64,000 nt of DNA, taken from NCBI RefSeq assembly GCF_003704095.1, contig NW_020844270.1, positions 682,001 to 746,000 on the forward strand, read 5' to 3'. The position numbers were made by a program, and so were the translations under genes. The stretch is from Pocillopora damicornis (Eukaryota). The notes under the pieces were generated by a model, which searched no databases, was not told the origin of the DNA, and worked only from the letters and a program-made list of their open reading frames with translations. Below, one piece after another: positions 4,484-64,000 of the stretch (within the stretch, counting starts at the first letter, position 1; each line of letters starts with the position of its first letter).

Positions 4484-4749
4484 GCTCAGACATCAATTAC
4501 CTAGAGAGCGGAGTTTGCTCAAGTCACTACGGAAAAGAAATTGTTGATTGAACGCTAGTCAAATAATAGTTCAATCTTTTACATGCATGGGCTAACTTTA
4601 CCGAGCTACACACGGCTAAATGTGTCGGTCAGAAAAAAAAGAGGAATTAAAAAATTCTTTACAACCGGCTAGTACATTTTTTTTGTGTGCGGAAATACTT
4701 TTCAGAAAATCGTCTTAAATACTTCTCTTGAAAGAAGACTGAGGAAATT

Positions 4750-5015
4750 AGGGACCCGTCATTATTCATCGGGGGGAGTGGAGAGAAATTGGAGGATTTA
4801 ATAAATTTTTTGGGGGGGAGGGAAGCACATGGCTATTGGGGGGAATTGAGGGGGGATCAGTCACTAACAGAGTATGAGTGGGGGAAACAAAAGAACATTG
4901 AATGCCAATGAGGGGAGAATAAGAATTCTTGACTGCCTCAGGGGGGGTTTAGGGGGGTTTATTTTGACACAACCAGAACCCGCCCTTCCCCTCCCCCCAT
5001 CACCCCCGTGATAAA
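4750..5015. repeat. G-rich MITE-like interspersed repeat, copy 1
   Basis: Shares GTCA(T/C)TATTCATC, GGAGGAT, GGGGGATCAGT, GAGTAT and CCCC..G(T/C)GATAAA blocks in the same order with 6293-6620. Confidence 0.55.
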
Positions 5016-5619
5016 AAAAAAAAAAAAAAAGAAAAAATTAGTGCCTCAGGCAGGAAAAACGCCTCTTCAGGTGGTAAGATCTTGGTTTTGAAAGGGATTG
5101 CTTTCCTTTGCGTCGAGGAGAACATATAACTCGATATTCTCGGCTGATAGAAATTACATAGAATCAAGGTGGAATTATATCGTTAGCTCCCTTTTTTATT
5201 CAGTTTGCTTTTTGTTTAGCCCCTATAAGGAATATTTTGTTCCAACCAGCGAGTTAAAACGTATCTTGAATTCATATCATAGCTTAACAACAAAGTGACA
5301 ACTTGTACACTCTGGTAGCTCGATTTGGTACTTTTTGAAGTTTATTGCTCAGCTGGTAAGACGACCATCCCAAGCAAGCCTCCGTAATTGAAGTGTCGTG
5401 CTCATGTATGTGGGCCTTTTATGCGAGTTTTTCCTCAATGTAAAGCCTAAGATATCTACTTAGGTTTCTTTGGTTTATTTCTACGCCGAATTGTTAGGTA
5501 TTCCTCCAGCAGTTTCATGTAAAAAAGCACTGATTGCCGCACTTTCACCACACGTTGGAGATACTTCTGTAACCTTGCACTTCCATTTTTAATCAAAAGA
5601 GCAAGTCCTTTAGTTCATC

Positions 5620-46578: not shown

Positions 46579-48021
46579 GTTTGACCCGAACTAACGCAAC
46601 CTTAAGGAAATTAGGGCTCACATCAGGCAGAAAACGAAATCTTCACTTTCATATCTATCTTATCATTTATCTGGTGTGAGAGTGTATCCGTGTAACAAGC
46701 AAATGAACGTAAATTTACGGTGATGACAAGTATAAAGGCGATGAAACACCTACGTCAATAGCTTCAGACCTAACCGATCGAACGCCAACGTCGATTAGAG
46801 ATATCCCGAGGGAATTTTTACCCAGTGGGATTGGGGCTAGTACTGAGTCTCTCAATGGCACGAGCTAAGCCCGGTCAGCCAAATGCCAAGTACCTTTTCT
46901 TCAAATCCTCGCTTGATTTTTCTTCTTTCTTTTTTTGGGGAAGAAAAGTTGTAAAACTCGCTGTCTGATAGAATAGGTAAAAAAAAAAAGAAAAAAATTA
47001 TAGCCAAAGAAATTATAACCGCAATTAAGGTTACCATAAGACTTGAACCGCAAGTCAGAATCCAGGCTTACGGAGCAACACAAGCTTTTTTTCTTGGAGC
47101 GGAAATGACATTTTCAAGGCCCTCTTAGCTGAGATGACTAGGTTCGCGCCCCGAAAAAATGGACACTGTCATTTTCTCGACGTAATTATTCAAATCTTGG
47201 TTGGGGATAATTTTTTTACATAGAAAAGGGCAGGCATGTAATTGCCCAGCTGGCAGCAAGTTTAATAAGATCTTCCTATATTTTTTTGTGGTAAAAAGTT
47301 CAGTTATCTCATTTGATTGTTAGAGAACATTGACAGGAAAGTTAAGCCTATTTAGACGAATAACGACCACTGTATGTGTATCGAGAAGCGGTCAGATCTC
47401 AGTAGCTTATGTTGCTGGTGACCGAGTAAACATATACTTTCCAGACTGAAGCCCTTCCTGAACGAGGTCTGATTTCGTATGTCACTCGTCAGTGAAGATG
47501 GTGATAATAGATTGCAATCGGTTCGCTCAATGCAACATCTTTCAACCTGTTGTCATGTGATACAACCTCTTTCTAGGAATCGACATGTTTCCGCCAAAGA
47601 CGATGTAAATGGGCGTGTGCTCAAACGAGGGTCGAAATCAACGCCCTTCTGGTGTTTCCAATGGTGCAAAAATAAAATAAGCTTGTGAGTGCAATTCACT
47701 CAAAACTGTGTGATCTCTTTTATTTTGGTGAACGATTTTTCTCTTAATAGGTGAACTGTTGCTCTCTGCTCGCAACAATAAAGAGATCAATAAGATCATC
47801 AATGGCGTCACTACTTTTAATAGAAAAGACCACGAACTCGCCTCAGGAAAGTGTCAATAGCGGATGAAATCATCTGCTAACTGAGACTCAGCGATTTTTC
47901 CTGCCAAGATTGGTCTTGATTACGCTTAAATTTGACGCGCAAAATTTGTCGAAAACTTCATTTGAGCAACCTCACTTGATTGCAAAATATACTGGAATAC
48001 AAGGGAATCAAGATAGCGCTC

Positions 48022-51000
48022 ATGCTGTCCGTGTGGTTGGTGGTGTTATCCACCCTCGTCGCCGCGAGTCTTGGAAGCATTGCTCCAGGGAAGCGATCTG
48101 ATTTTTCCATGTCTGACAACCAGTTTTGTAAGTGAGTTTCAGATTGCCATATCATATGGTTTTGTTGCGAATTAGAGTCCAAATTCAAGAATACAACCTC
48201 GTGAATCGTAAATGTTAAATCAGTTTAATGGATTCATAAGAATTTTGAATTATTTTGACAGTCTGAGGAAAATTCCGTGCGATAAAATTTCAACGATGAA
48301 TTCGATTTCGAAGAACTTACGATCAACACAGCATAACCTTTTGTACTACATCTAAAGCTAACTATTCCATGCGTAGGTTGAATCGATTTTGTGATGAGAA
48401 TAATTGATATCAGAGGTAGGTAAACAGTGAACGTGTTTGCAGATCGCGTCGGAGACACGAAACTGGATGATGAGGTCACAGACTGTGCTCTTGTAGAACA
48501 TCAGTTCAAGAAAGGATATATCCGATTGCGAGAGTATCTGGAACGGAGAAGGGGATGTGGAAGAAAAGGTAACTTACTAATAACTCTTCTCTGCGAGCTG
48601 AATATATCAAAACCATAATAAAGGATTATTTTGGTACCTGTAACAGGTGGATGGTTTTGACGAAAAGCTTGATATATAAGTGTGGACGAAGGCAAGACGG
48701 AAACTGGGTCCAGTGCACGAAATAGAGGCTGGCTAATAACTTTTTTTCCGCTCAATATTAATGTCGATCTGAAAGACAAACTCGGGCTTTTGAGTCGCTG
48801 TTCGTGTTCATGGCTAAACCCAAATAAATTTTGGCAGAGACAACCCAAAGAGAAGAAGGGCCAAACGGATAGAGTGAAACAATTCGTTTGCTTGTTTGTT
48901 ATAATTAATTTATTGAGCATTTTACCAGTTGGCCTCGAGGTGATGCACTTGACCCAGTTTCCCTGGATCACAGCTTTACCTGGCACAAAGGTTTATTAAA
49001 AAGAGTCTCCAATGTGAGAGAGATGAGTAAATTAAAGAGAAGCGTGTCGAGTCACTAACATGAAAACGCTAAAGTTTAGGTAGCGCAAAACTCTTAGAGC
49101 GTCAGTTTCTGCTTGTTTTCGGGTGGATTATCGTACCTCAAATCTTCCTCTGAAATTATGATCAGAATTCAGTGCGCAACTTTAAGTGTCAAAGTGTTTG
49201 ATACTCTTCTGCGTTTTAATCAATCGTGCCTTACTTGGTTTCTTCTCTTTCAAAAGACCGCTTAATTTTGTCACTATAATGACACCAGTTTGTTTGGATA
49301 AACACAGGGCCCCAAATGGATTTCTGTAAATACTACCAAATCTGCAATAAAAAGTACCATTTTCATCTGAATGCTTGCTTTGAAACTCAGGAGAGTTTTT
49401 AACAAATACAAAAATACTAAACGTTTGAACGTGTCCTTTAGTAGCATGTCGTAATGATGTGGGATATTGATCAAATGAAGCCTTTAAGTGCTACTGTGAT
49501 TCTTTCTTTATTCACTCCGAGCTTTCGCCGTTCTACGGCATCATCAGGGAGGACGATAAAATATTTGCGCTATGGTTTTAAACGTTGGAGGTGCCACTGT
49601 AAATTAGCATAGTGTAAAACTAGCCAGTAGGACGCATGAAAACTAATGGCGTGATAAAATGTTCTAAAATATGTGTTAAAAACAGTTAATTAAAATAGCT
49701 CATTAAAATAAATCATTAAAATAGAAGATCGTTAATGTATTGACTTTATAATCTCATGATCATGCAACGTTTTTATTGCAGGAAAACTTAAAAACATCGA
49801 AGGAATTGAAAAGTCAACAGAGGATGACATTAACAACGAAAACATCGCCGAGATCGCCAAATCGGCCACTGAAGACTTTCACTACTCTGTGCCGTCTCCA
49901 TTGCCCGTCGCCAAGAAGGTCCCTAAGCTCAAAACTATTCCTCAAGGTGAGAGTTTACCTTGTTATTTTATTTTGATGGAGCAAGTTTCAATTGAATGTT
50001 TAACATGTCAAAAGATATCCATTTTTGTTGGGTCGGAATTCCTTGACAGCGCTCTGTCATTGGCGATGAAATTTCACGCCAGCCTCTTGACCAATCAGAT
50101 GGCGCTCCTCACGTTTGAGGCGCTTTGCTGGTTTTTGATTTATGTGAGCTCCGATTGCTCCTTGGGAAAGTCTCCCTGACCCTGTTTGGGGTTATAAGTT
50201 TTAACGACATTAAATCAAAAAGTGTCTTGATTTGCGTCTCAATGATATGTTTCTTTCGCCATCAAACAACAGCCAACACATTCGGGTTTATCAAGACGAA
50301 TTCTTTAGGCACTTTCAGTTTTTGAATACAAGAGCTCGACGATTACAAATACAAATTTTGGCATTATCATACCGAAGGTTTATGATTTGAGACAAAACAA
50401 CTGCTCAATCAATACTTAGATTGAAACAGATCCTTGATCTCCTTCTTTTGCTTAGTGATCAACATTTATCAGCCTCATAAAATGGCTTATGTGCCCCGCA
50501 GGCAACCTGTGCCAGGTGGGTGTTAGAATAAGCTAACTAATAACTTGATTAATCAACAGTCATGCAGCTAGGGCGTACTCCTTCAGTGTTGAAAGCCTTA
50601 ATAGCACCCCCATTATCTATTTAAATATAGGTTTTTTAGCTTTAGTAAGTTTCACTGGCACTGTTTGGCCGAGAAAATGTTTCTGTTAATGCTTAGACGG
50701 AAGGTGACATTCACTCGTGTAATCCATGCACACCTCGCTCTATGCTTGGTTATAAGAATACATGCCACTAAAAGTTATCAATCAAATGCAAGTTAGTTCT
50801 TTAGGCACTCGAACGATAGATCTTTCCTCAAGCCCTGGGCGAGCAATGCGTGTTTTGGGACAGGACACTAATTTTCAATGTATCTCTTACCACCCAGAAG
50901 TCAAGTGAGTGCCGGTGAATATTCCTTAAATGTTGCAAATGTGGCACAGACGTAGGCGCAGTTTGGATAACCTATAGTTCTTAATACTTAACCAGCACTG

Positions 51001-52566
51001 AAAATGAGATGACTTTCTGGGACTAATTTAGACAGTAATGTGATGTAAGCAATGAAGTAATTCTAGCTATACTACCTTCAATAAATCTTGTTCTTGTCGC
51101 TAACAGTGGCGACAGCAACAGGAAAAACAGCGGTACAGCACACTCCCGCCCGCCCCGCTCTCCAAGCCACGGTACAAAGGAACAAGCCAGCAAGACCAAG
51201 CTTGAGCGACTATCAAAGCAAATCTCAGAATTTAGGACTTTCCTTTAAGAGCAACCCATCTGTCGCGGCTTTTCCAAGCTCTGTGGAGAATCAAAACACA
51301 CAGGCTCTATTCACTAACGCGCTCGGGGATCAATACACGCGTCTGGCTTCCAACTACGATCACCTCGATCAACCAAAACCCAACCACGACCTACTTCAAA
51401 CATTTTATCCAGGCACATTTCAAGAAGGCTCACACACTGGAGAAACTGTTGCTGTGGGTCAACCGCTGTTCGTTCAAAAAGCCCGCGTCCAAACCACCAC
51501 TAATCCTCAAAACAAAATGTCCAGCTTCCTAAAAAATGCAATAAATAACTTCAATAAGCCCTCATTAAGCACGCCTGCTAGTACCAGTACATATAAAGGA
51601 CCAAGTATTAACTCTCAACCACAGGTTTTGAATAAATCTACCACAAAAATTAATGCTCAAAGTAACCCGGACGAAAATATCGACGAAAATCTTGCAGCTA
51701 TGCGCGATCCCGAAAAAGACGACAGCAATGGTTCAATCGATGAAAAACCTACTCCGGAACCTGGAATTGACGATAAACCAGCTAACCAAGCCACCATCAT
51801 TCCTTCTAATGATCCCAGCTCATTGTCTTTGTCACAGAGACCTAGAGTACAATTAGAACCAATGAAACCTGTTTCAGACATGTCAAACGGGCTTGGAAAG
51901 CCGATTATGAAAGGAACCCCTACATCTGTAAACAAACCGCAGAATGCTGTAGCTCAACACAACACTGCTCCAGAAAAGCTTCAACAGCCTTCAGTCAACT
52001 TTGATGTCCTCAAAAACAAAATTATGCATACAACCAATGCAACTTTCCTACGGCGCATGCTCACGCTTATTCAAAAGATCACTCATCACAAAGACTTTTC
52101 GAAACTGCAAGCCCCTGCTCGGAGTCTGGTGACCCAGGCGAACACCGCTGTCCAGGCGCTCACTAATGCGTATAAAGAGAGAGTTTCGTCAACACCGCTG
52201 GCCGGTGGAAATGGTGATCAGCTATATCCCCTGAGTAAGAAGTCCGCTGTCCAGAGATTTAGTCAGGCGTACAACGGGAGAATTTCAGCTTCGCCGCTAA
52301 ATTTCGGAATTGTTAACCAGATTTATAGGAATGTCTATCCAGCGACCAAAAAGTCGACTCTCCCAGTGATGAATCAAGTGTATAACCCAAGGATTGCAGC
52401 CATAAGACCTGCTAACCAATTTTATGGCAACAACTATTCGGGGCTGACCAAGAAATTCCAAATAGCAAGGAATCCCTATTACCAGAACTATTACCAATAC
52501 AGACAACCGTATTACAGCAATTTGCAGAGTATGCAATACGGGTTATACAACGGCAATGAACCATGA
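48022..52566 (+). CDS. Uncharacterised secreted precursor A, 5 exons, ~638 aa (signal peptide, KR site, C-x23-C exon, long P/Q/N/S/T-rich region, Tyr-rich C-terminus)
   Basis: Exons 48022-48127, 48443-48568, 49782-49946, 50456-50515, 51107-52566; all introns GT-AG phase 1, frame open. N-terminus MLSVWLVVLSTLVAASLG-SIAPGKR. Confidence 0.8.
49515..49551 (-). ncRNA. Apparently intact minimal type I hammerhead ribozyme (Penelope-type) in intron 2 of precursor A, antisense
   Basis: Minus strand: CUCC-CUGAUGA-U-GCCG-UAGAA-CGGC-GAAA-G-CUC-GGAG followed by UGAAUAAA. Stem I CUCC/GGAG, stem II GCCG/CGGC, palindromic AGCU stem III, CUC cleavage triplet. Confidence 0.8.
50815..50930 (+). mobile_element. 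Degenerate tRNA-derived SINE remnant
   Basis: TCAAGCCCTGG...GTGTTTTGGGACAGGACACT...TCTCTTACCACCCAG...GAGTGCCGGTGAA resembles a widespread metazoan SINE body as I recall it; no intact tRNA cloverleaf. Confidence 0.4.
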
Positions 52567-53797
52567 GTTAAACTGTTTGAAATGACTCAGACTAAAAAAA
52601 CCAATGTCACCTGTTATAGGTTTTCGCAGCGTTAATAAGTGAACAGCGCATAATAAATGCATCCGAGTAGACAAGCCTTTGGACTAGACTATTCCTCTCC
52701 ATCATCTTCACCTACTACACTTTGTATGTGCATTGCTGATTACCACGCAACCTAGCAAGTTGGACAGGCTGTAATGAAGGGCGCTTACGATTATGACGAG
52801 CCAATTATGACTGGTTGTAAGCGCCCTGGGCAAATGCTCTTTCTCTGTACTTTTGCCTAATCGATGAGGCTACCTAGAGCCGGGTACTCTTTGATTGTTG
52901 GCAACATCTTCTCTTACCCCTACTGTAACTTTAGATAAAGTTCTCAACTTGTATGAGATTAATTTTTCTCTTTCTTCGTTCCTTGATTTTTTGATGCAAC
53001 ATTTTTGCAGCTTACGTTAAATCAATATTATGTAGTTTCGTGCCGTTTTGTGGTTTACAAAGTTTACTTGTCATGTGATATTAGGTCACATAAAAAGAAA
53101 AACCTATCACGGTACTGTTGAGAAATCATGTCGAGAAATCAAGATTAGCCTAATGTAGTCATTTTTTGTATACGCATACTTTAAAGATAAACTGATTTTA
53201 GATTTTAGACAGTCAGTTACCCCACAACCAAATATAGGAGAACCTTACTAACGACCACTGAATTAATGAAACACTATATATAATTGTAAAGGCTTTGTAG
53301 GAAAATAAAAATTTGATGTTAATATCGTCATCAGTTTCAGTATTATTTCGGTTCATCTTTCCTAAGCGACCAAGCGTGTGAGACTAAACCCCTACGTGTG
53401 CTACTCTAGCCTAGCTGGCCCTTGCTATTAGTTCTTCAATACAAGCTTAGCTTTTCTTCGCTGGAAAGAGGCCTATGAGCGGCGCTAATCGGTCTGCAAG
53501 AGGGTCCAGCAGTTAATAATGAGGACCCCTACACTATTAGTGCCAGACTCCCTGCAAACCTCTCCCCTAATCGTCTCACGCGGGCGTGAGCTTACTTCTT
53601 TCTTAATTTATTCAGTGTGTTCTCTCTGATTTAAACTTTTTCTTGTTTACGCTTTATCCAAGATGAGCGGATATGAACGCGTATTGAATTACAAAGAGTG
53701 TCCCTCGAATTTATCCCCTTTAATCCATTCCGAGTAAAGAGCATCCGATCCATCGGCTGGATAGGGCAGTGAACTTTTAAGTTAAAACAAGATTCCA

Positions 53798-54011
53798 TTA
53801 ACCCTCTGACCCCTAAGAGCGAATAGCATCTGATCCCTCCTTGCAATATCTCCCCGAATCACAGATTAAAGTCACGAGAATAAAGAAAATGATCACCAAC
53901 CAAAGAAGCCCTTGATTGTTAAACAAATAATTTCCTCGTTAACACCTCAGGATATTCACAGAGAACAGTATGGAGAATATGCATACTGATGTATGGCTGT
54001 GAGAAGCTCAA
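53798..54011. mobile_element. Family B TTAA MITE
   Basis: TTAACCCTCTGACCCCTAAGAGCG...AAAGAAAATGATCACCAAC...GAGAACAGTATGGAGAATATGCATACTGATG. Confidence 0.8.
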
Positions 54012-54575
54012 GGAGCAAGAAAACTATTCCCTAACGCCTGTTTTAATCGATAAACACGATACAAAGATTTTTACGGATAGCTATCTTTCTCAGATTTAGG
54101 AGAGGCTGAACAAGGAAAATTTCTGGAGGGGACTGAAATTTGTCAAGGAGGACTGTTAACGTTTTATAGATTTGACCCTACAAACTACCCATTTTTATTT
54201 CTTTCTTATGACCACAAGATCCCTTTTTTCGCGTTTGTAGAATTTTCTTTTTCTTGGTGATTTATAGTTTTCATCTCTTGGCACCTGCTTCAGTTAACAT
54301 AAACCAAATCATTTGTACCAATCAACACGAAGAGTACCTCCATAAACTGTGGACCTAGCAATAAAATAGAAGTCCCGCGCGCGGCTTTAATTGGTTATCG
54401 TTGGTCCCAAAATAACGTAATACCAAAACACTGGGTGAGATCTGACTTGAGCAACGCAACTGCCAAATTTGGTGTCTTAGCTGATGGTAGAAATCAAAAT
54501 TTTGCTGGTTTTGATTTAATTTGTTAAGTTTTAACTCGATCAAACCAAGCGGAACTGGACCGTGTGTTTGAAAGA

Positions 54576-56066
54576 ATGGAGCGCTTCACACTTGCTTGGG
54601 TTCTGTTTACGCTTTGTCTGTGTTCTGTGTTAGGAAGACCCGCAAAACAAAAGTCATCACTCTTAAAGACGATAGTCAAGAGATGGGACTTGATCGTCGA
54701 AAACGACCGTAAGTCAGTGAAGTGTTTAATTTTATGCCCGCTATGTTAAGATCATCAATTACCAACACAAACGCTCTAAGCGTGCCTAACGGGGCTCACA
54801 ATCCATCAGAAAAATTGACAAAGCACTTGAAAGAAAACCATGATCTCAAAACACAAATTGTATTTGAAATGTCAGAAAACACCTGCTGGTCTCGAGTCAT
54901 GGCGATGTAAAGATTGTCAATCATTACTATCACATTCTCCTAATCCTACCTATGTTTTGGTCAAAGTTGGTGGGAAAGGTTTGTTTTGGCGCAATAAGGC
55001 ATTTTAGGGTAAACTTGGGTTGAAGGAATTTTGTTTTCAACCTTGTGACATAGCCTACATGTGATTACCCCCCTCTCCCTCCCCCCCGCGTGATCCCTAA
55101 AGAGGAGGGGAGGGAGGAGAACTTCATCAAGTTCACTGCTGTCAACTGCTTCTTCCGCGCCGAAAAAGAGCCCTTGTTAGTCTGCCCCTTGCATAATAGG
55201 CTTCCCAAGAACTGAGGGCAGGAGGGACACCAACTCTTCAACATTTTTTGATTCATCTATCGGCCTATAAATTTATTCATTTATTAATTTTTTTTTTTGC
55301 TGTACAAATTAAATCATAATGGTTCGGGGTCTGAGAGAGCAGCATTCATTCGACATCACTGAAACGACAAGTTACCTGAAGTTGCTGATCGAGTACATGA
55401 TTAACCAGGTAGCTTCTTGTAAATAATTCGCAATTCTCCCTTAAAACAGTTGCACTATTCCCTGGGTTATCATGGGCTCTGAAATTTTCAAGCTGAGTCT
55501 TAATTACTGACATGAAAAGAAACTAGATGCTCACTCAAACTTACTATCGGAAGTGAGTCAGTTTTTGGCAGCAAAATATAGCAAAAGGTAAGGATGACAT
55601 CGTAGATTTCGCTTTGGCGGGTTATTACATGCTACATCATTTCCATTACAGATAGATTGGAAAAGCACAACAATTTCTTCGCAATAATGTGTATGTTCAA
55701 TTTTATTTACAAGTAACACATACTTAAATTTGTATGCGCCATTACCTGTTAGCCATATGTTGCGTCTATGTTGAGTCCATAGTTTGCATACAACTCTGTC
55801 AGGAAGTAATGGAATTTCAGCGTCTCCTTCATTCCTTACAAAGGCTAGAATTTCTTACCACCATCAGTAGTAGCAGCTATGAAGCAAAGGCTTCCAGATT
55901 TTTCATTACTGATTAGCTATGCCAAGCTTCAAGCCATTTGTCTCTGTGCATGGGATACTCTGGTTTAGCTGTTGCAAATCACGGTTTGAAATTATATCCA
56001 GACGGAAGACGAGACATCATGGACCGAACCACGCGCACTACTAGTGCGTCGAAATGTAAAAGTTAA
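54576..56066 (+). CDS. Candidate 78-aa prepropeptide (amidated peptide precursor B), 3 exons
   Basis: Exons 54576-54708 (donor GTAAGT), 55652-55690 (TTCCATTACAG / GTATGT), 56002-56066 (TATCCAG); phases 1,1. Product MERFTLAWVLFTLCLCSVLG-RPAKQKSSLLKTIV-KR-WDLIVENDHRLEKHNNFFAIMY-G-RR-DIMDRTTRTTSASKCKS. Exon 1 is well supported; exons 2-3 are predicted only. Confidence 0.55.
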
Positions 56067-56591
56067 AAAAGAAACAGAGCATTTCGGATCACCGGAAAAA
56101 ATACAAGTTTGCCAAGTAAATGAATTTTCCGCAACCTCTAAGAGCGTCAGATCTAAAGGTGAAAATCAACCGCAAAAGGTGTCTACGTACAACAATCCTT
56201 ATGGTAAAAATGGCACAAAACTTGCCAATAGATACACGTTTATTAAGTTTTGATTCTTCTGTTTAATTGCTATGTATACTTTAAACCCTCCACAAGCTTC
56301 GTTCGCAAGTGTTTGATACTTCATACCTCAGTGAACGACGAAAAACTCACCTGCTAGTTCTTAGGAGATCGTATCAGTTTTAGCAGGTATCTCTTTGTAG
56401 ATAGAAGATGAAAAAATTGACATGCTAAGGAAAACATGTTTAATTCATAAAGTTGTGACACTTCCTGTAATGTAGTGAAAGCAAAATCAGAGAGCACGCG
56501 CTCCCTTGGGTTCTCAACCGTGAACAAGAAATCCTTGGAATCCATTTCTCCGTAATTTCACCTCGGACCCTCGGGTTTCGAAGATTTCAAG

Positions 56592-59500
56592 ATGAGGAAA
56601 AGCGTTCTTTTGATCCTTCTTGTGTTGATCGCAATTTGTGCGGCTAAATCGTCCACGAACAAGAAACACAAGGATGAGAAAAGCAAAAAACTTAAAGTAA
56701 CCGACACTAAGAAACACAAGGACGAACCGAAAAAACACAAGACTAAGAACGAGCATAAAGACAGCAGCAAGAAACATCTTAAAGATGCCAAGAAAAAACA
56801 AGACTTGAAGAAAAAAGATGAAAAACCAAAGATTTCGGAAGATAAGGCCATCAATAAGACGGCAAATAACAAGACCGAAATTGTAGAAAAGAAAGAAAAC
56901 AGCACCAAAGGTAAATTGAAATTTTGAAAATCGAATTCCGAGTTACGGGGAAACGCCGGTTCAAGAGCAATGACTATTATGACGGGTACCGGTCAACTTT
57001 TCAAAATAAATTCAGTTCATGCCAGGTGCTTAGGCTGGGGAGTTCTGTACTATCCAGATGTTCTGAGAAAAATTGCAGCGAATTCGGATAGTATTTTATT
57101 ATATTACAATCGATATTACATTCAGTATCCGAACAAGTATCCTTCCTGGCAAGCGCGCAATTTCACTGTCATTGAGTTAACCCCGTGAAGTTAACCGGTG
57201 GAAATGATTGGTCAAAACAAAAGTACATCTTCTGACAGAAAACACTAACTTCCACTCGTGTGTTGATATTCCTGTTCTTATCTTTACCATAGCTTTAACA
57301 CATTTTTTTAAATAGCCTCAATCACTAAGGATATAGATTCACGTTAAAACAAAGCTGAAGTGGAAAAAGCTTTGAACCTCTTGATCCGTAACTGACGCGG
57401 TGAGGTGAAGATATAGATAACAGACTCGATTATTACTCAGTTTCATCCAAGTAATATCTAATCTAAGTCATTTAACGAAAAACAAGTTCTTTTTCTCTTC
57501 TTGACAGGCGGTTTATTGTTAAGCGCGTGAAAAGTGATGCAAAAGTAATCTAAGCGACATGAAACGTCGGCTATGTGTTATGACTGAATGGTGTGGCCAC
57601 AACTCATCAACACCTCCAGGTTATAACTCCACGGAGCCCTGTCACAGGGTTTGACTAAAAATTTCCGAGATCTTACCTTACCCTTCCCTCCCTTAAAAAA
57701 AATCTCATCATGATCCACGAGGAGATGGGCTGGCTCGGCTCAGTATAAACCTTGAAAGGTCAAAGGCCACGTTGTAAATGATTATCTCTATACAAGCTGT
57801 CATTTCGCGCCTGTGTGAACATTTAGTCGTGCAGAAATGTCAGCTGGGTAAGCGGGATAAAATTCCCTTAGATAATGGATTACTAGAAAGTCGCCCTTCA
57901 AATTGGACCCCTCCTCATTTCGGGCTCATTAAGAGGTCCTTAAAGGGCAAGGGTGTCTGCGAATCAGGTGGCCGAGTCAATGAACAATTCGGAAAGCTAT
58001 GTATAGTTTGCGATATAAGGTCAATTTTAAGGGTTAACTCTTGCAATGTACATTTTTTAACCTTCTCGCTTTTCTAAAGTGTTCTTTTGTCTTCATAACA
58101 GCAATCCTCTCACAAAACCCACCTGCCGATTGCCAGAATATCATAGACGATTATTCCAAAGGAAAATTGCTAATGTACGAGTACAAAATTCAGATCAACC
58201 GGTGCATGAATAAAGCTAAGAGTGATGCAGGTAAGTGGTTTGATTGACTGACAGTTGATTGACAGACAGATGATTGACAGTTTATTGATGGACAGGTATA
58301 CTTGCATCTGATGATACAACGGGTTTTCAAATTTGAGTTATACTCAGGTATAGGTAATTAGCATGTGGTTTTTAAATCTTGGCTGTTGGCAAAGAGGTTT
58401 GGTAGACCCGCGTGAAAAAAAAGTTAACAGGTAATGTACACTTATAATCTCCTCAGTCAACTGAATTTGTAGGATTGAAGTGGAGGGGAGAGCTTCAATA
58501 AGGCTATTTTTTTCATGCACAAACAGTTAGCGTTCGACACCAGCTGGATGAAAACCTCTCGTGTCAGAAAAGTGTGTCTGGGAGTTATTTCCTTTTAAAC
58601 CTTTGATCCCCAAACCGTTCACATTTGCGCTGGATCTACCTTGCATTCCTCATCAAGCTAACACAGAATGCGTTAAGCCTGTTTCTAACAAACCTTTCCA
58701 TAATCACTTAAGTCACGGTAACCCGCTAACAACTAACGCTCAAAACATTGTATAACGCATTAATCACAGACGGCACAGCTGATGCTGACGCAAAATCAGC
58801 ACTGTTGCGTCCGGACAGTGAACCGACAGAAGACACTGACACGGATCAAGCTGTCAATGTGAGACCTTACAGCACCGAAGAACAAAAAGAGGACTTTGAC
58901 GAAGACTCTGACACAGGTCATAGCGATTTTAGCGCGCATGATAACGATAACGACGATGATTACAATGATGATGATGATAAAAGTGACGATTACGACGAAC
59001 CGGAAGAAAACGCAGGTGAAAATCTGGTTAGAACAAGTTTCAGGAGCTTATAAAATATTTCCACTGTGTTGAAGCCACGCTCTTAATTAATGCCGAATAA
59101 TCTGTAACGGTGCTAAACCAGCTGTAACTGCATATTAACTTGTTCGATAAAATGATGGTAATTGTAGACAAGAGAGGAAAGGAATTTACAGTTGGGAAAA
59201 TTGCCATTTGGAACCGATTAACAAGTTTTAATTACACGCTATCTGTTGGTCATCACATGTAAGTTTGCAAGGAAATACAATATTTGCGTTGCTTCGACCA
59301 CCTACAGTTTCAAACAAAAAGAACCAAATAAACCCACAATTATGGCCTTAAATGTGACAGGTTACAAAGGAGCCGTTAATGTTATTTAATCTAAAAATCA
59401 GTTTTTCTACACCTCTGTGTGCCTAAATTTAGCTAAAAAGATGCAAGTCCCTGCAACTTCTGGTTACCAAGTTCCTGATATGACAGTCCAGAATTACAAC

Positions 59501-61309
59501 ATGCCAGCTCAACAGCCAGAAATGCCAGCGCAACAAGCCGCCTTTTACTACCCCAATACGGGTAAATTAGTTTTCTTGTTCAAGCTCCTATTTCAAAGGT
59601 TAAGTGAGAATTGGCTGACCTTGCGATAGAAGGAAATTAATTGATGACTTACAAAAATGGCCTATACTCAATCCAGAATACGCTTGGACATGGGCCAGGA
59701 AGACTGGGTCGAGTATATCGAGTCCAGGCTCAACGGTACACTCCCCGCGTAAAGTAACTAAAACTTCATGGAAGTTCTTGTTTGTTTAAATAGTTCTGCT
59801 TGGCTCTCGGCTTTTCTTTCAGTAAGCACTTATGGGAAAATGTTTAGATGTATAATGGAATTTCATAAAGATAGGACATAAAGGGAGGGAGCTGGTCATT
59901 TCACTACATTTCTCTGGGAAGTTTACCTGCAAGCCTCAACCTTGTGTACTCGACTCACGTTCCCTGCCACTGAAGTAACTGACAGAACTCGACGATTATT
60001 GACCGAGCGATTTTGAAACATATAGAACCAGTTCATACAGTGTATACATGACGATTACCTCAACTCAGAGCTCATCGCAATCATGAACTTTCAACCATTG
60101 ACATGGACAAACCTATGCAAAGATACTTAACTTCACGGTGCATCCATCTTACATCTCTCTCCCAAAGCGAAGAATAGAACGCATTTCCATTCCACCACAA
60201 AGGCGATAGTTCACTTATTGTCTTACAAACCGATCAAACCTGAGGAAACATAAGCGCAAATACTTTCATTTCATTTTGATAGGAGATTTCTTTAGTGTCT
60301 AAGCTTTGCAATAAACTTGAAATATCGAAGTATTCATCAAGTTTCCAAATATTTTTTAGCCCAGACTCCATATAACGGAGCACCAGTTCAGAATCCAGTT
60401 CCCGACCAGACTCAAGCAGCTTTCGCTCCAAATCCTACGAACCAGTACCCAGCCAATCCTGCTCCTTTCCATTCCGCAGATCCAAATATGGCCATGAATG
60501 CTATGGCCAAGAACACCATACCAGACGCTGAGACACAGGTTAGTTTAAAAAAGGAGAGAGAGAGAGAGAAAGAGTTCATGAGAATTAATGAAGGTAACGA
60601 ATGTCTTACGTTCCGGTCCAGCAATCTGATAAGGGCAAAATTTCCACCCCGCTCGCAAGGAACGACACTACCCCATGTGACTGCCTTTTACTCCGGCAAT
60701 TTGTCCAAGTTTCTCGAGATTGTTTGTAAGAAGTGCAACTACATCTTAAGTAAGTTTGAAAAGCTTAGTTTTGAAATTTTTTCTCTTAACTGAACAACAT
60801 ATTATACCACTGCTGATATGAAGTTCAATTACGGCTACCATGCTCTTATCAACTGAATTAAAACTGGTGTCGGGAGTGGGAAGCATGTAGTGTTCGAAAC
60901 AACCAAAAATACATTGTGTAATTGATACTTACTCTTGACCACAAAATTTCCTTAGATACAGCAGCCCCCAGCATCTCAAGCAAATGCAGTGTTCGATCAA
61001 TGGCGAGCCAGCAGTTTTGGTGCAGCAGCTGCTACCAAGAAGGACGAAACACCTAACGCTCCAGAAGCTCCCGGCAATGACCAATTCGCAGAGTTTATGA
61101 AGATGCAAGCTTCCACTGGTAACGTAGCGGAGGCATCACCTATAAGCCAGCAAGCAGCTATTCCAGCGGCCATGCAACAAAGAAGTGACGTTCCACAGCA
61201 GCCAAATGTGTTTCCCGCGCAGGTGCAGTTACCCAACACTGTCCCTGGCCCAAGCCAAGCCTTTTACATGCAACCTGAAGAGCATGGTGATTTCCCTGAA
61301 AACCCATGA
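56592..61309 (+). CDS. Uncharacterised secreted precursor C, 6 exons, ~451 aa (signal peptide, Lys/His-rich block, C-x23-C exon, Asp-rich block, P/Q/A/M-rich tail)
   Basis: Exons 56592-56910, 58102-58230, 58770-59015, 59433-59561, 60360-60538, 60956-61309; GT-AG, phases 1,1,1,1,0, frame open. Signal peptide MRKSVLLILLVLIAICAA. Confidence 0.82.
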
Positions 61310-61619
61310 GAGAAAAAGTACTCGGTTTTGATATGATCACTTTTGAGGGTAATAACGTAATAACCTCACTCACTATGTGGAGCTCTGAAGGGTGAAAAAC
61401 TTTTCTTATTTGGAGGGGAAACAGCACAATTTCCTAAAAAGGAGTTTCAGTAAGACGTGATTATTCTCATGCAGTGACCCACATGGAACCTTTCACCTCT
61501 TGCTCACGATATCAAGTAAATGTTGGTGGGCAGAATGGGGCAGATAACAACAACGAAATAAAAGTGTCCTCTTTCTAACACGGTTTTGTCTCGTCTAACT
61601 ATGATTAAAAATTTTTGAT

Positions 61620-61710
61620 TGTAGCGCAGCATGGTTGAGTGCATCACTCTCGCAATTTGGGTTTGAGTTCCGCCCTGGCCATCAGCTGACTTTGTGTCAT
61701 GGTAATCCCA
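61620..61710 (+). mobile_element. Degenerate tRNA-derived SINE head
   Basis: GCAGCATGGTTGAGTG...GGGTTTGAGTTCCGCCCTGGCCATCAGCTG, with A/B-box-like remnants. Confidence 0.35.
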
Positions 61711-61829
61711 ATCAAGTTTGGTTGATCTAAAGTATCTGTCGTGTTAATTAAGTGAAATGCACGTGAACCAGCTGGAGTAGTCCGAGTATACTTCCAGTTA
61801 AAACGCAGCGCGTACAACTACAATTTTCG

Positions 61830-64000
61830 ACAGTCATTCCTAAGGCGTGGCCTCAGTTTGAAACCTTCCATCAAATGTACACAGGGTGATTCTCCGGACA
61901 AGCTTTAGATATGACAGTAACGAGAGGTTTCGTTGCAATTTGTTTCTATCACCAACCCTTTAGGTCTTGGTAATCGTCCTTTCTCTTTGATAGAAAAAGG
62001 ACACGCTACACAGTACTAACTACTTAGCTTGGGTGTAGACTTAACTAAGTTTTTACCTTCTCGCAGTAATATGGAGTGAATCCCTGTTCAAATGAACCAC
62101 CTGACAGTAAAAAATGCGATAAAATCAAACCCTTACCTACCTCCCCCCCCCCCAAAAAAAAAATACAAACAAACAAAACAAAAATAAAAACAAACAAAAT
62201 ACGCAAGTAGTAGCCATTGAGGTTTCATCTCCTGACCGTCACTCTCACCGAATCTGATCCCCTGCTATCCAGATAAGACTAAAGGGGGAGGGGGGGAAGG
62301 GGGAGAGGAGAGAAATGGTGTTTTAACCCACGCATGCTGAAAAATCATACTCGGATTATTTCATATCCAACCTGGGATTTGCACCCAGACCACGACCGTG
62401 ACAAGTCACTACGCGTATATTGTTGGATCTCACTTTGAGGATGTTCCCAGCATACAGAGGTTGGCAGACAGACAGGTCCAAGATGTCAAGCCTCTCGGTG
62501 GTACATAATAACCATTCCCGTTCCTTCACTTATAGTTTTCCCATGGCTACGTAATCTGAAACCTAGAATAACAGACGTCTGGTCTAGTTTGAGTCCAACT
62601 TGTAGAGGGGGTCAGTTAGATCAAAGGACTGTAGCGGCGAGAACCCGAGTAGCAAATATTTACAGTTTCTCTTCATACTTTTATGCAATTTGGCTGCCTA
62701 TGATCCCAACGACAAATCAAGACGCTACGACTGCTTCTCTGAAACACGTTTAAGTAACGGGGTGTTGGGTAGAGTCGGAAATCGACTTTCAGTGGGCGAC
62801 TCCTCCTTAGTGGGACCTAGCCTCTGGAAATCTTGCATGGTTGAGTGATGGGCCTTTAAAGATAGTGTCAGTACGTCAACGGTCGAATGTGTTTGAAAAC
62901 CACCACTTTTACAAGAAACAGGTTATACAGTAACAATACTTTAATTGAAATGACTCGCTGTATGTTAATCAGGAAACCCTTCACTCTAAAAGAAAATTTC
63001 TATTAGCAACTGCACCACAGACAACGGGACTACTGCGATGCAAATTTATTAAATGTGGGGAAACAGCAACGATTCTCACTCCAAAAGGTCACGCACACAG
63101 TCCTACACTTCTTGACATACACAAAGGACAGTTGATTGTGGCTTTCATTCCTAGCACTACCGCACAATTACCAAACGTGCTTTGGAGGCTTTCCGGAAAG
63201 CTGCTGTATTTCCCCTCTTAAAGCTCAGCTTTGTGGACTACGTAACCGCGTCCGCTCTATTAAATTCAACTTTTGGTCCCGAAGACGTCTTCGTAGACCT
63301 AAAATGGTCAATGTGTGGGAGCTCTTAGCTCGACGAAATTTTAACCTCTTTCCAAATTCGGGAAAGCGATGCCTCATTTTTAAGAGGGACTACAAGCTGT
63401 TTAATAGAACTACTGTTTTCTAAGTCAATTTCGAGTCCCAGCGACATATTCACAACGTAATGCTAGACAAAAACCACAAAAAAGGAAGAGAAAGATATAA
63501 ATGACAAAAAAAAAAAAAAAAATAATATATATATATATATATAAATAAAACAAGAAACAATACTCCTATTCAAGTGGAGAGGATTACCCCTGGCACCCTA
63601 AAAAAATTAATTTCTTCTCTATATAAGTAGCAAAATAATAGTAGTGATTCCAAAACAAGAGTTGAAATGAAAGAAAATTCCTCGTAAAAATCCTTCAAGT
63701 TGTGACCTCGCCCTCGGACTAAACTGAGCTATATCAACGTTATCTCAAGTTTGTAAAATAATTAACCAGTTTGAGACATCCACTCAGTAGTTCACTACAT
63801 GACAGTCCAGAAATCAGAAAGAAAAAAAAACACCTAGGCACAATAACGAAACACATCAACTTACCATGGGCCATAAACATACCAGGCGTTTCCGGGAACG
63901 TGATTCTGCCTCCTGACAAAACCACCAATCCTCACCTGGAACCGCAGCACAAAAACTGTACCCTCCATCCAAAGCACTGGAGAATTGGTGCGATGGCAAT
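61830..64000 (-). pseudogene. Decayed multi-exon gene with SRCR-like and sushi/CCP-like remnants, truncated by window end
   Basis: Splice-bounded relics: 62562-62434 (FRLRSHGKTISEGTGMVIMYHREA*HLGPVC), ~62278-62200 (LIWIAGDQIR*..SGDETSMATTC), 62100-62057 (GSFEQGFTPYYCEK), ~61900-61845 (LSGESP/LCTFDGRFQTEATP*), ~62728-62680 (SSRSVLICRWDHRQPNCIK). In-frame stops and frameshifts present. Confidence 0.45.

What the first reader, a model, noticed from the sequence alone, without database searches (positions are those of the whole stretch)
48022..61309. Tandem cluster of three secreted precursor genes resembling a regulated-secretion (granin-like plus peptide hormone) module
Seen: three same-strand genes within 13 kb, each beginning with a signal-peptide exon that ends in a phase-1 intron. 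Each has dibasic sites and no folded domain I can recognise. A and C are distant paralogues (shared C-x23-C exon); B lies between them and may encode an amidated peptide. Known: vertebrate chromogranins A/B are acidic, disordered, dibasic-site-rich proteins with one N-terminal disulfide loop implicated in granule sorting. Inference: this may be a co-regulated cassette of granule or matrix proteins plus a peptide cargo in a neurosecretory, gland or calcifying cell type. The granin comparison is an architectural analogy, not demonstrated homology.
Basis: partly seen in the sequence, partly recalled or inferred. Interest (0 to 1): 0.85.

Follow-up and report, generated by a model that had tools for sequence, protein, structure and literature searches.

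The report
Two tandem coral secreted-protein genes
The supposed three-gene "hormone cassette" is two neighbouring, distantly related coral genes for secreted, mostly unstructured proteins of unknown function; the middle "peptide gene" is an alternative first exon of the second gene, and public annotation already models that gene so.

Summary
Three signal-peptide exons ending in phase-1 introns exist at the stated places, but they belong to two genes. RNA contigs from four runs join the "gene B" signal exon (54576-54708) directly to the Cys-loop exon of "gene C" (58102). No contig joins it to the proposed amidated-peptide exon, and that exon is not conserved in Stylophora. "B" and the Lys-rich first exon of "C" are therefore alternative first exons, each with its own signal peptide. 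An Asp-rich exon is optionally skipped, giving isoforms with net charge from -34 to +7. RefSeq already annotates this as LOC113666031 isoforms X1/X3/X4. It is conserved in stony corals and sea anemones. Gene 2 was found only in stony corals. The order ABC transporter, LIX1, A, gene 2 is the same in Stylophora and Acropora, and A is followed by gene 2 in Orbicella too. A-C paralogy through the C-x23-C exon is supported (hhalign P 0.002; Cys-anchored permutation p 1e-4; same exon phases; both predicted helical hairpins). Neither gene matches Pfam, granins included, and gene A's product is basic (pI 9.8). Function and cell type are untested. The granin analogy stays architectural only.

The parts
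48022..48127 (+). Gene A exon 1: signal peptide, then a Lys-Arg site and a short linker; ends in phase 1
   Evidence: matches the N-terminus of Stylophora XP_022799395
48443..48568 (+). Gene A exon 2: C-x23-C module (126 nt, phase 1-1), the most conserved exon
   Evidence: 83% identical to Nematostella; dN/dS 0.02 against Stylophora; predicted helix-turn-helix, pLDDT about 72
49782..49946 (+). Gene A exon 3 (165 nt, phase 1-1)
50456..50515 (+).
   Evidence: AG/GT flanks and in-frame translation; the same 20 residues occur in the Stylophora, Oculina and Acropora orthologues
51107..52566 (+). Gene A last exon: 486 codons of low-complexity, basic sequence. It holds a conserved helical block, Lys-Lys-led repeats and an invariant Tyr-rich C-terminal tail.
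54576..54708 (+).
   Evidence: joined to 58102 in 4 of 4 RNA runs; 92.6% nt identity without gaps to Stylophora; dN/dS 0.38; RefSeq isoform X3 holds its exact translation; also present in Acropora and Orbicella
56592..56910 (+). Gene 2, alternative first coding exon 2: a second signal peptide plus about 85 Lys-rich residues with three N-x-S/T sequons; phase 1
   Evidence: joined to 58102 in 3 runs, loose ends in the fourth; RefSeq isoforms X1 and X4; conserved in Acropora, Montipora, Porites and Orbicella
58102..58230 (+). Gene 2 common exon: C-x23-C module (129 nt, phase 1-1), paralogous to gene A exon 2
   Evidence: pLDDT 81-86 helical hairpin; dN/dS 0.10
58770..59015 (+). Gene 2 cassette exon: Asp/Glu-rich (32 acidic of 81 residues, pI 4.05), optionally skipped
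   Evidence: junctions 58230>58770 and 59015>59433, and the skipping junction 58230>59433 in run X11; isoforms without it are P0058/P0105 and P0113
59433..59561 (+). Gene 2 exon, Gln/Pro-rich, opens with an invariant Lys-Lys (phase 1-1)
60360..60538 (+). Gene 2 exon, Pro/Asn/Gln-rich (phase 1-0)
   Evidence: junction 59561>60360 in 4 runs; loose ends at 60538 continue with the start of the last exon
60956..61309 (+). Gene 2 last coding exon with the stop codon
56002..56066 (+).
   Evidence: no junction from 54708 to it; acceptor and motif lost, with several indels, in Stylophora
59562..60962 (-). Antisense spliced transcript overlapping the 3' half of gene 2. Its minus-strand introns are 60240-60932 and 60528-60932; the outer ends of the transcript are not defined.

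Best explanation
The stretch holds two tandem, same-strand paralogous genes. They encode secreted, largely disordered proteins built on one N-terminal module. That module is a signal-peptide exon ending in phase 1, followed by a 42-codon phase 1-1 exon encoding a two-cysteine (C-x23-C) helix-turn-helix hairpin. Gene A (5 exons, 638 codons) is a hexacorallian gene, found in stony corals and sea anemones. Its product is basic (about +31). Gene 2 was found only in stony corals. Two alternative first exons, presumably with two promoters, each supply a signal peptide: one short type resembling gene A's, one with a Lys-rich glycosylatable extension. An Asp-rich exon can be skipped. Because these introns are all phase 1, every combination stays in frame, and isoforms with net charge of about -34, -21, -6 and +7 result. 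The gene structure, the isoforms, the paralogy, the conservation and the lack of known domains are shown. The rest is inferred. The proteins enter the secretory pathway. The disulfide-stapled hairpin, the part under the strongest purifying selection, is probably the binding or sorting handle. The fast-evolving charged tails probably give matrix-like bulk properties, tuned by exon choice. I judge extracellular or granule-lumen matrix material more likely than a peptide hormone. Cell type and function remain untested.
For: RNA junctions 54708>58102 (4 runs), 56910>58102 (3 runs), 58230>58770, 58230>59433, 59015>59433 and 59561>60360. RefSeq P. damicornis LOC113666031 isoforms X1, X3 and X4 contain the window's exon translations exactly. 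The same two first exons, in the same order, occur in Stylophora, Acropora digitifera and Orbicella. Gene A homologues occur in Scleractinia, Nematostella, Actinia and Actinostola, with none outside Hexacorallia. Gene 2 homologues are scleractinian only. Paralogy: hhalign's single hit is the Cys-loop (P 0.0022); the Cys-anchored column permutation gives z 4.2, p 1.2e-4; only these two copies exist in the genome. Both hairpins are predicted helical and the rest has low pLDDT. dN/dS is 0.02-0.51 for all eight exons tested. No Pfam match.
Against: No signal-peptide predictor was available; secretion rests on hydrophobic N-termini and small residues at -1/-3. Gene A's junctions were not tested with reads in this genome; they rest on orthologous RefSeq models and on orthologue proteins called on short Logan contigs. 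The hhalign probability is only 13%. The function has no direct evidence: no cell-type, proteomic or localisation data could be reached. Contig depths cannot rank isoforms.
Confidence: 0.72

Rival explanations
1. One reading: three separate genes form a regulated-secretion cassette, with two granin-like proteins flanking a small precursor whose product is cut after Lys-Arg and amidated at Gly-Arg-Arg.
For: The open frame from 54576 through 54708 plus 56002 onward does read Lys-Arg, nine residues, then Gly-Arg-Arg. Colinear RNA contigs cover 55700-56900 at low depth.
Against: No contig joins 54708 to 56002, while all four runs join 54708 to 58102. The 56002 acceptor and the Gly-Arg-Arg motif are deleted or changed in Stylophora, and that stretch has background identity (about 79%) with frame-breaking indels. 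RefSeq and Logan proteins in five genera start with this exon and continue into the Cys-loop exon.
Confidence: 0.03
2. Granin-like function without homology: both proteins are dense-core-granule matrix or sorting proteins of neurosecretory or gland cells. The N-terminal disulfide loop acts as the sorting signal, and conserved Lys-Lys/Lys-Arg sites are cut by prohormone convertases.
For: One N-terminal disulfide loop, long disordered tails and acidic gene 2 isoforms with pI 4.2-4.9. Conserved sites: Lys-Lys before gene A's C-terminal tail (10 of 10), Lys-Lys at gene 2 residue 171 (7 of 7), and Lys-Arg in all short-type first exons. The conserved ends with divergent middle resemble chromogranin A/B (my knowledge).
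Against: No PF01271 match at E up to 1. The gene A product is basic, pI about 9.8. The loop spacing is 23, against 20 in chromogranins (my knowledge). The N-terminal Lys-Arg of gene A is replaced by Lys-Pro or Lys-Ser in Acropora and one unnamed homologue. High contig depth in bulk adult polyA RNA fits an abundant product better than a rare neuroendocrine one, but this is a weak argument.
Confidence: 0.12
3. Gene 2 is a stony-coral innovation for calcification. Its Asp-rich isoforms act in the calcifying medium or skeletal organic matrix, like coral acid-rich proteins.
For: Found only in Scleractinia. It has a signal peptide plus an Asp-rich exon, which is expanded in Acropora. The acidic exon is alternatively included.
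Against: Neither Stylophora accession of gene 2, nor that of gene A, is in the table of skeletal proteins or the supplements of PMC7115838. RefSeq gives the Acropora orthologues no skeletal-matrix name. The paralogue A also occurs in non-calcifying anemones. Asp-rich proteins are hard to detect by tryptic mass spectrometry, so absence is weak evidence.
Confidence: 0.13
4. Signalling precursor. The strongly conserved pieces are released or presented as ligands, and the low-complexity parts are spacers. These pieces are the N-terminal hairpin, gene A's central helices, and the Lys-Lys-led repeats and Tyr-rich C-terminal tail of gene A.
For: Conservation is island-like: the hairpin is 83% identical between coral and anemone, and 43 invariant columns cluster in the central helix and the C-terminal tail. 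Lys-Lys-led repeat units number about 2 in Pocillopora and 4 in Acropora, plus the terminal unit. The Lys-Lys before the tail is invariant.
Against: There are no Gly-dibasic amidation sites. The basic residues after the second cysteine are not conserved. Lys-Lys is a weak convertase site (my knowledge). No receptor or peptide evidence exists.
Confidence: 0.12

Closest known systems
RefSeq gene models for the same loci: Pocillopora damicornis LOC113666031 (isoforms X1/X3/X4), Stylophora pistillata LOC111336759 and LOC111337373, Nematostella LOC5501941
   Same: Same genes. The exon translations of the window are contained exactly in the P. damicornis isoforms. The alternative first exons and the acidic-exon skipping are already modelled.
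   Different: They are annotated only as uncharacterised, or with names that differ from species to species (PFC0760c-like, sec16-like, triadin-like, helicase SEN1-like, B-cell linker-like). I take these names for low-complexity matches. No paper in the searched library cites the accessions. The A-gene 2 paralogy and the shared Cys-loop module are not annotated.
Chromogranin A/B (granin family, Pfam PF01271)
   Same: Signal peptide, a single N-terminal disulfide loop, long disordered chain, some conserved dibasic sites, conserved termini. Gene 2's acidic isoforms have a granin-like pI.
   Different: No sequence match. The loop is C-x23-C, predicted as a helical hairpin. The gene A product is strongly basic. 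Few dibasic sites are conserved. Granule localisation is unknown.
Coral acid-rich skeletal proteins (CARP/SAARP type)
   Same: Secreted, with a long Asp-rich run, and restricted to stony corals (gene 2 only).
   Different: Not in the Stylophora skeletal proteome list. The Asp-rich part is a skippable exon. The rest is Gln/Pro-rich, with a Cys-loop shared with an anemone-conserved paralogue.
Vertebrate secretory calcium-binding phosphoproteins and SIBLINGs (enamelin, MEPE)
   Same: Nearest named clusters by protein-language-model features for the Nematostella gene A protein. All are secreted, disordered and Gln/Pro-rich.
   Different: Scores of 0.75-0.77 lie in the range that shuffled proteins reach, so the likeness is compositional only. 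The introns here are phase 1, whereas SCPP genes use phase 0 (my knowledge).

Membership tests
Granin (chromogranin A/B, Pfam PF01271) | Sequence match to the family profile | tested here: not met
   hmmscan at E up to 1 on all exons and on four full-length orthologues gave no Granin hit
Granin (chromogranin A/B, Pfam PF01271) | Single N-terminal disulfide loop (C-x20-C in CgA/CgB, from my knowledge) | tested here: inconclusive
   One N-terminal Cys pair is present in both genes, but with spacing 23 and a predicted helix-turn-helix. Disulfide formation was not shown.
Granin (chromogranin A/B, Pfam PF01271) | Acidic protein (pI about 4.5-5.5) | tested here: not met
   The mature gene A orthologue has pI 9.78 and net charge +31. 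Gene 2 isoforms range from pI 4.17 to 9.02.
Granin (chromogranin A/B, Pfam PF01271) | Many conserved dibasic processing sites | tested here: inconclusive
   Of 10 dibasic sites in the gene A reference, 2 are conserved in all 10 sequences, and a third in all 6 that align there. Gene 2 has 1 of 3 fully conserved and another in 6 of 7.
Granin (chromogranin A/B, Pfam PF01271) | Residence in dense-core secretory granules; Ca/pH-driven aggregation | not testable with these tools
   No localisation or biochemical data could be reached
   No 54708>56002 junction; 54708>58102 in 4 of 4 runs
   The acceptor and the His-Gly codons are deleted in Stylophora, and the stretch has background identity with indels
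Coral skeletal organic matrix acid-rich proteins | Detected in the skeleton proteome | tested here: not met
   The Stylophora accessions of both genes are absent from the protein table and supplements of PMC7115838. Only one species was checked.
Coral skeletal organic matrix acid-rich proteins | Signal peptide plus long Asp-rich run | tested here: met
   The exon at 58770-59015 has 32 acidic of 81 residues; the run is longer in Acropora
Coral skeletal organic matrix acid-rich proteins | Sequence homology to CARP/SAARP proteins | not tested
   No direct comparison was run. RefSeq naming gives no such relation.
Unnamed hexacorallian Cys-loop secreted-protein family (gene A plus gene 2) | Signal exon ending in phase 1, followed by a phase 1-1 exon of about 42 codons with C-x23-C | tested here: met
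   Exons of 106/126 nt and 133/129 nt. The same holds in Stylophora, Acropora and Orbicella.
Unnamed hexacorallian Cys-loop secreted-protein family (gene A plus gene 2) | Residue pattern shared beyond the cysteines: Asp before the first Cys, aromatic at +7, Gly at +10, Glu-Tyr at +16/+17, Lys at +29 | tested here: met
   hhalign P 0.0022; permutation z 4.2, p 1.2e-4

The most novel reading that the evidence does not exclude
An old hexacorallian secreted protein, with a disulfide-stapled helical hairpin and a basic, Tyr-rich disordered tail, was duplicated in tandem in the stony-coral stem. The copy evolved two signal-peptide first exons and a skippable Asp-rich exon. One locus now makes a polycation (gene A, +31) and a tunable set of polyanion-to-polycation partners (-34 to +7). 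These could condense together, coacervate-like, in secretory vesicles or in the extracellular or calcifying space, with the shared hairpin as the pairing handle.
Probability: 0.1. Interest if true: 0.65.

Novelty: new variant of a known kind. Interest (0 to 1): 0.33.

Why it matters
The result removes a false candidate neuropeptide gene. It also shows that public annotation already models the locus correctly, although under names that differ from species to species and look like low-complexity matches. What remains is an undescribed, lineage-restricted family with no Pfam model. One member is shared by corals and anemones, with a hairpin under very strong constraint. The other is a stony-coral-only paralogue whose promoter and exon choice changes the net charge of the secreted product. 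If expression mapped to calicoblasts, gland cells or neurosecretory cells, the locus would give a tractable handle on how corals build secreted matrices or granules. Until then it is an ordinary pair of orphan secreted-protein genes.

Tried and rejected
- Pfam on every exon and on full-length orthologues gave nothing above noise.
- A PDB sequence search with the Cys-loop profile gave only a low-complexity hit.
- A structure search with the gene 2 model gave a best Z of 4.1, generic helical hairpins.
- ESM Atlas gave compositional look-alikes below 0.85 for the whole protein and no usable hit for the N-terminal module.
- Complex prediction on the two hairpin regions returned no verdict (score 0.00). 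This is evidence neither for nor against binding.
- Anemone loci hold no gene-2-like exon within 10 kb downstream of gene A.
- The own genome holds no third Cys-loop exon.
- Literature searches by accession, locus tag and RefSeq name found nothing.
- The held supplements of the Stylophora cell atlas contain no entry for these genes, and no supplement is held for the Pocillopora acuta spatial study.
- The look-up of encoding contigs found no record for the Oculina and A. muricata orthologues.
- Rfam found no family in 47000-64000, and none at E up to 1 in 49300-49900.
- I considered an amidation site after the second cysteine of gene A (Cys-Gly-Arg-Lys). I rejected it because the basic pair is not conserved (Arg-Gln, Thr-Ala and Arg-Glu in relatives).
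- I considered tyrosine sulfation of the N-terminal Asp-Tyr motif. I rejected it as a conserved feature because the tyrosines are Phe/Ser in Pocillopora and Stylophora.
Exons were searched one by one by reference, and the database isoforms returned by the tools served as full-length stand-ins.
Full report
**What is in the sequence.**
- On the plus strand there are clean GT-AG exon chains.
- Gene A has coding exons at 48022-48127, 48443-48568, 49782-49946 and 51107-52566.
The 20 residues it encodes are present in the Stylophora, Oculina and Acropora orthologues.
- With the microexon the coding length is 1917 nt (638 residues), the same length as Stylophora XP_022799395. All four introns are phase 1.
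- All three first exons begin with a hydrophobic stretch of 15-19 residues followed by small residues, and all end in phase 1.
Exons were handled one by one by reference, and database isoforms returned by the tools stood in for full-length products.

**Two genes, not three.**
- I laid RNA contigs from four runs of three studies on 54560-60559.
- Every run joins 54708 to 58102 with GT..AG ends. Three runs join 56910 to 58102, and the fourth shows it as loose ends.
- The other junctions are as modelled. Run X11 also skips the acidic exon (58230 to 59433).
- The locus is collinear with Stylophora. The exon at 54576-54708 is 92.6% identical without gaps, like the other coding exons (88.8-93.9%).
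- The supposed later exons of B are at about 79-81% identity with frame-breaking indels, which is the intron background.
- The acceptor and the His-Gly codons of the proposed His-Gly-Arg-Arg motif are deleted in Stylophora.
- RefSeq already models the locus this way. P. damicornis LOC113666031 has isoform X1 (451 aa, Lys-rich first exon), X3 (389 aa, short first exon) and X4 (369 aa, Lys-rich first exon, no acidic exon).
- These isoforms contain the window's exon translations exactly. A fourth form, with the short first exon and no acidic exon, exists as a protein called on a Logan contig.
- Both first exons, in the same order, are present in Acropora digitifera and Orbicella and in the Acropora protein isoforms. 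The arrangement therefore predates the deepest split of stony corals.
- dN/dS against Stylophora is 0.38 and 0.27 for the two first exons, so both are under purifying selection.

**Distribution and linkage.**
- Gene A's last exon finds orthologues throughout Scleractinia, and weaker ones in Nematostella and Actinia.
- A profile of ten family members adds Actinostola and finds nothing outside Hexacorallia.
- Gene 2's last exon, scored exhaustively against 1.84 billion representatives, finds five proteins, all resembling the stony-coral sequences. A full-length isoform finds only scleractinian proteins.
- In Stylophora and Acropora digitifera the order is ABC transporter, LIX1, gene A, gene 2. 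Orbicella also has A followed by gene 2.
- The window is collinear with the Stylophora LIX1 region upstream.
- In Nematostella and Actinia no gene-2-like exon lies within 10 kb downstream of A.

**Paralogy.**
- Single-sequence searches of the genome with either Cys-loop exon find only that exon itself. A joint profile finds both exons and no third copy.
- Profile-profile comparison of the two family alignments gives one hit, exactly the Cys-loop (P 0.0022, probability 13%).
- With the sequences anchored on the cysteines, the positions invariant in one family coincide with those invariant in the other. These are Asp before the first Cys, an aromatic at +7, Gly at +10, Glu-Tyr at +16/+17 and Lys at +29.
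- Permuting the columns gives z 4.2 and p 1.2e-4.
- Exon sizes (126 and 129 nt), phases and tandem position agree. The short first exon of gene 2 also carries a Lys-Arg followed by x-Asp-hydrophobic, as gene A's first exon does.
- AlphaFold2 predicts a helix-turn-helix for both modules (pLDDT about 72 and 81-86) and disorder nearly everywhere else (mean pLDDT 39 and 45).

**What the proteins look like.**
- There is no Pfam family, granin and secretogranin models included. There are no useful PDB, fold or Atlas matches.
- Gene A is basic. The Stylophora orthologue has pI 9.78 and net charge +31.
- Its conserved islands are the hairpin, a helical block near residue 450-510, and an invariant Lys-Lys. 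That Lys-Lys is followed by a Tyr-rich tail of about 36 residues ending in Tyr-Asn-Gly-Asn-x-Pro.
- Corals carry 2-4 extra Lys-Lys-led repeat units before this tail.
- Gene 2 isoforms have net charges of -34, -21, -6 and +7. The Lys-rich first exon has three N-glycosylation sequons.
- Only a few dibasic sites are conserved.

**Function.**
- Nothing here shows the cell type. Accession searches found no paper, and the held supplements of the coral cell atlas have no entry for these genes.
- Neither gene is in the Stylophora skeletal proteome list.
- My best reading is that these are secreted, disordered matrix-type proteins. The hairpin would be the constrained binding or sorting handle, and the tails would give charge-dependent bulk behaviour tuned by promoter and exon choice.
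- Granule-matrix, calcification and ligand-precursor readings each keep roughly 0.1-0.15.
- A complex prediction for the two hairpins gave no verdict and counts for nothing either way.

**Limits.**
- Only contigs, not raw reads, were available. Starts, strands and levels of the RNAs are therefore not shown, and isoform ratios between runs are only hints.
- Gene A's junctions in this genome rest on orthologues.
- No signal-peptide predictor was available.

**Verdict.** The paralogy holds, but the three-gene cassette and the amidated peptide do not, and the granin comparison is architectural only. The locus is already annotated, though uncharacterised. Interest is modest.

Noticed in passing
window 59532-60962, minus strand: Spliced antisense RNA over the 3' half of gene 2. 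RNA contigs join 60239 to 60933 and 60527 to 60933. The skipped stretches start CT and end AC, which is a GTAAGT donor on the minus strand. The contig at 59532-60239, inside a gene 2 intron, is as deep as the exons. There is no minus-strand ORF of 90 aa or more, so it is probably non-coding. The donor GT and the 60239 acceptor are kept in Stylophora; the 60527 acceptor is not.
   Followed up: partly
window 55700-58129: Colinear, unspliced RNA contigs cover the intron between the two first exons and the next intron, at about 10-25% of exon depth in runs X1 and X3. Coverage of 54760-55560 is near zero. This could be retained intron, a far-upstream start of the second first exon, or another transcript; contigs cannot tell.
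   Followed up: no
protein P0001 (window 51107-52650): An ENA-derived protein with 306 member sequences is the last exon of gene A read through its TGA stop as Trp and extended by 23 residues. This is a gene-caller or genetic-code artefact, not a real product.
   Followed up: partly
L008:1048-5260 (Orbicella faveolata): A match to gene A's last exon (1048-2424) lies upstream of gene A's exons 1-2 (4708-5260). The annotated gene A product there is only 270 aa. This is either a misassembly or a partial duplication.
   Followed up: no
   Followed up: partly
RefSeq names of gene 2 orthologues: The same gene is named PFC0760c-like, COPII sec16-like, triadin-like, helicase SEN1-like, B-cell linker-like, INO80-like, glutamic acid-rich protein-like and acidic repeat-containing protein-like in different species and isoforms. 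The names probably come from low-complexity matches and should not be used for function.
   Followed up: yes
window 54708>58102 versus 56910>58102; 58230>59433: First-exon use seems to differ between samples. The short first exon dominates in runs X1 and X3, the Lys-rich one in X11 and X10. Acidic-exon skipping was seen only in X11. This hints at regulated, perhaps coupled, choices, but contig depth is a poor measure.
   Followed up: no
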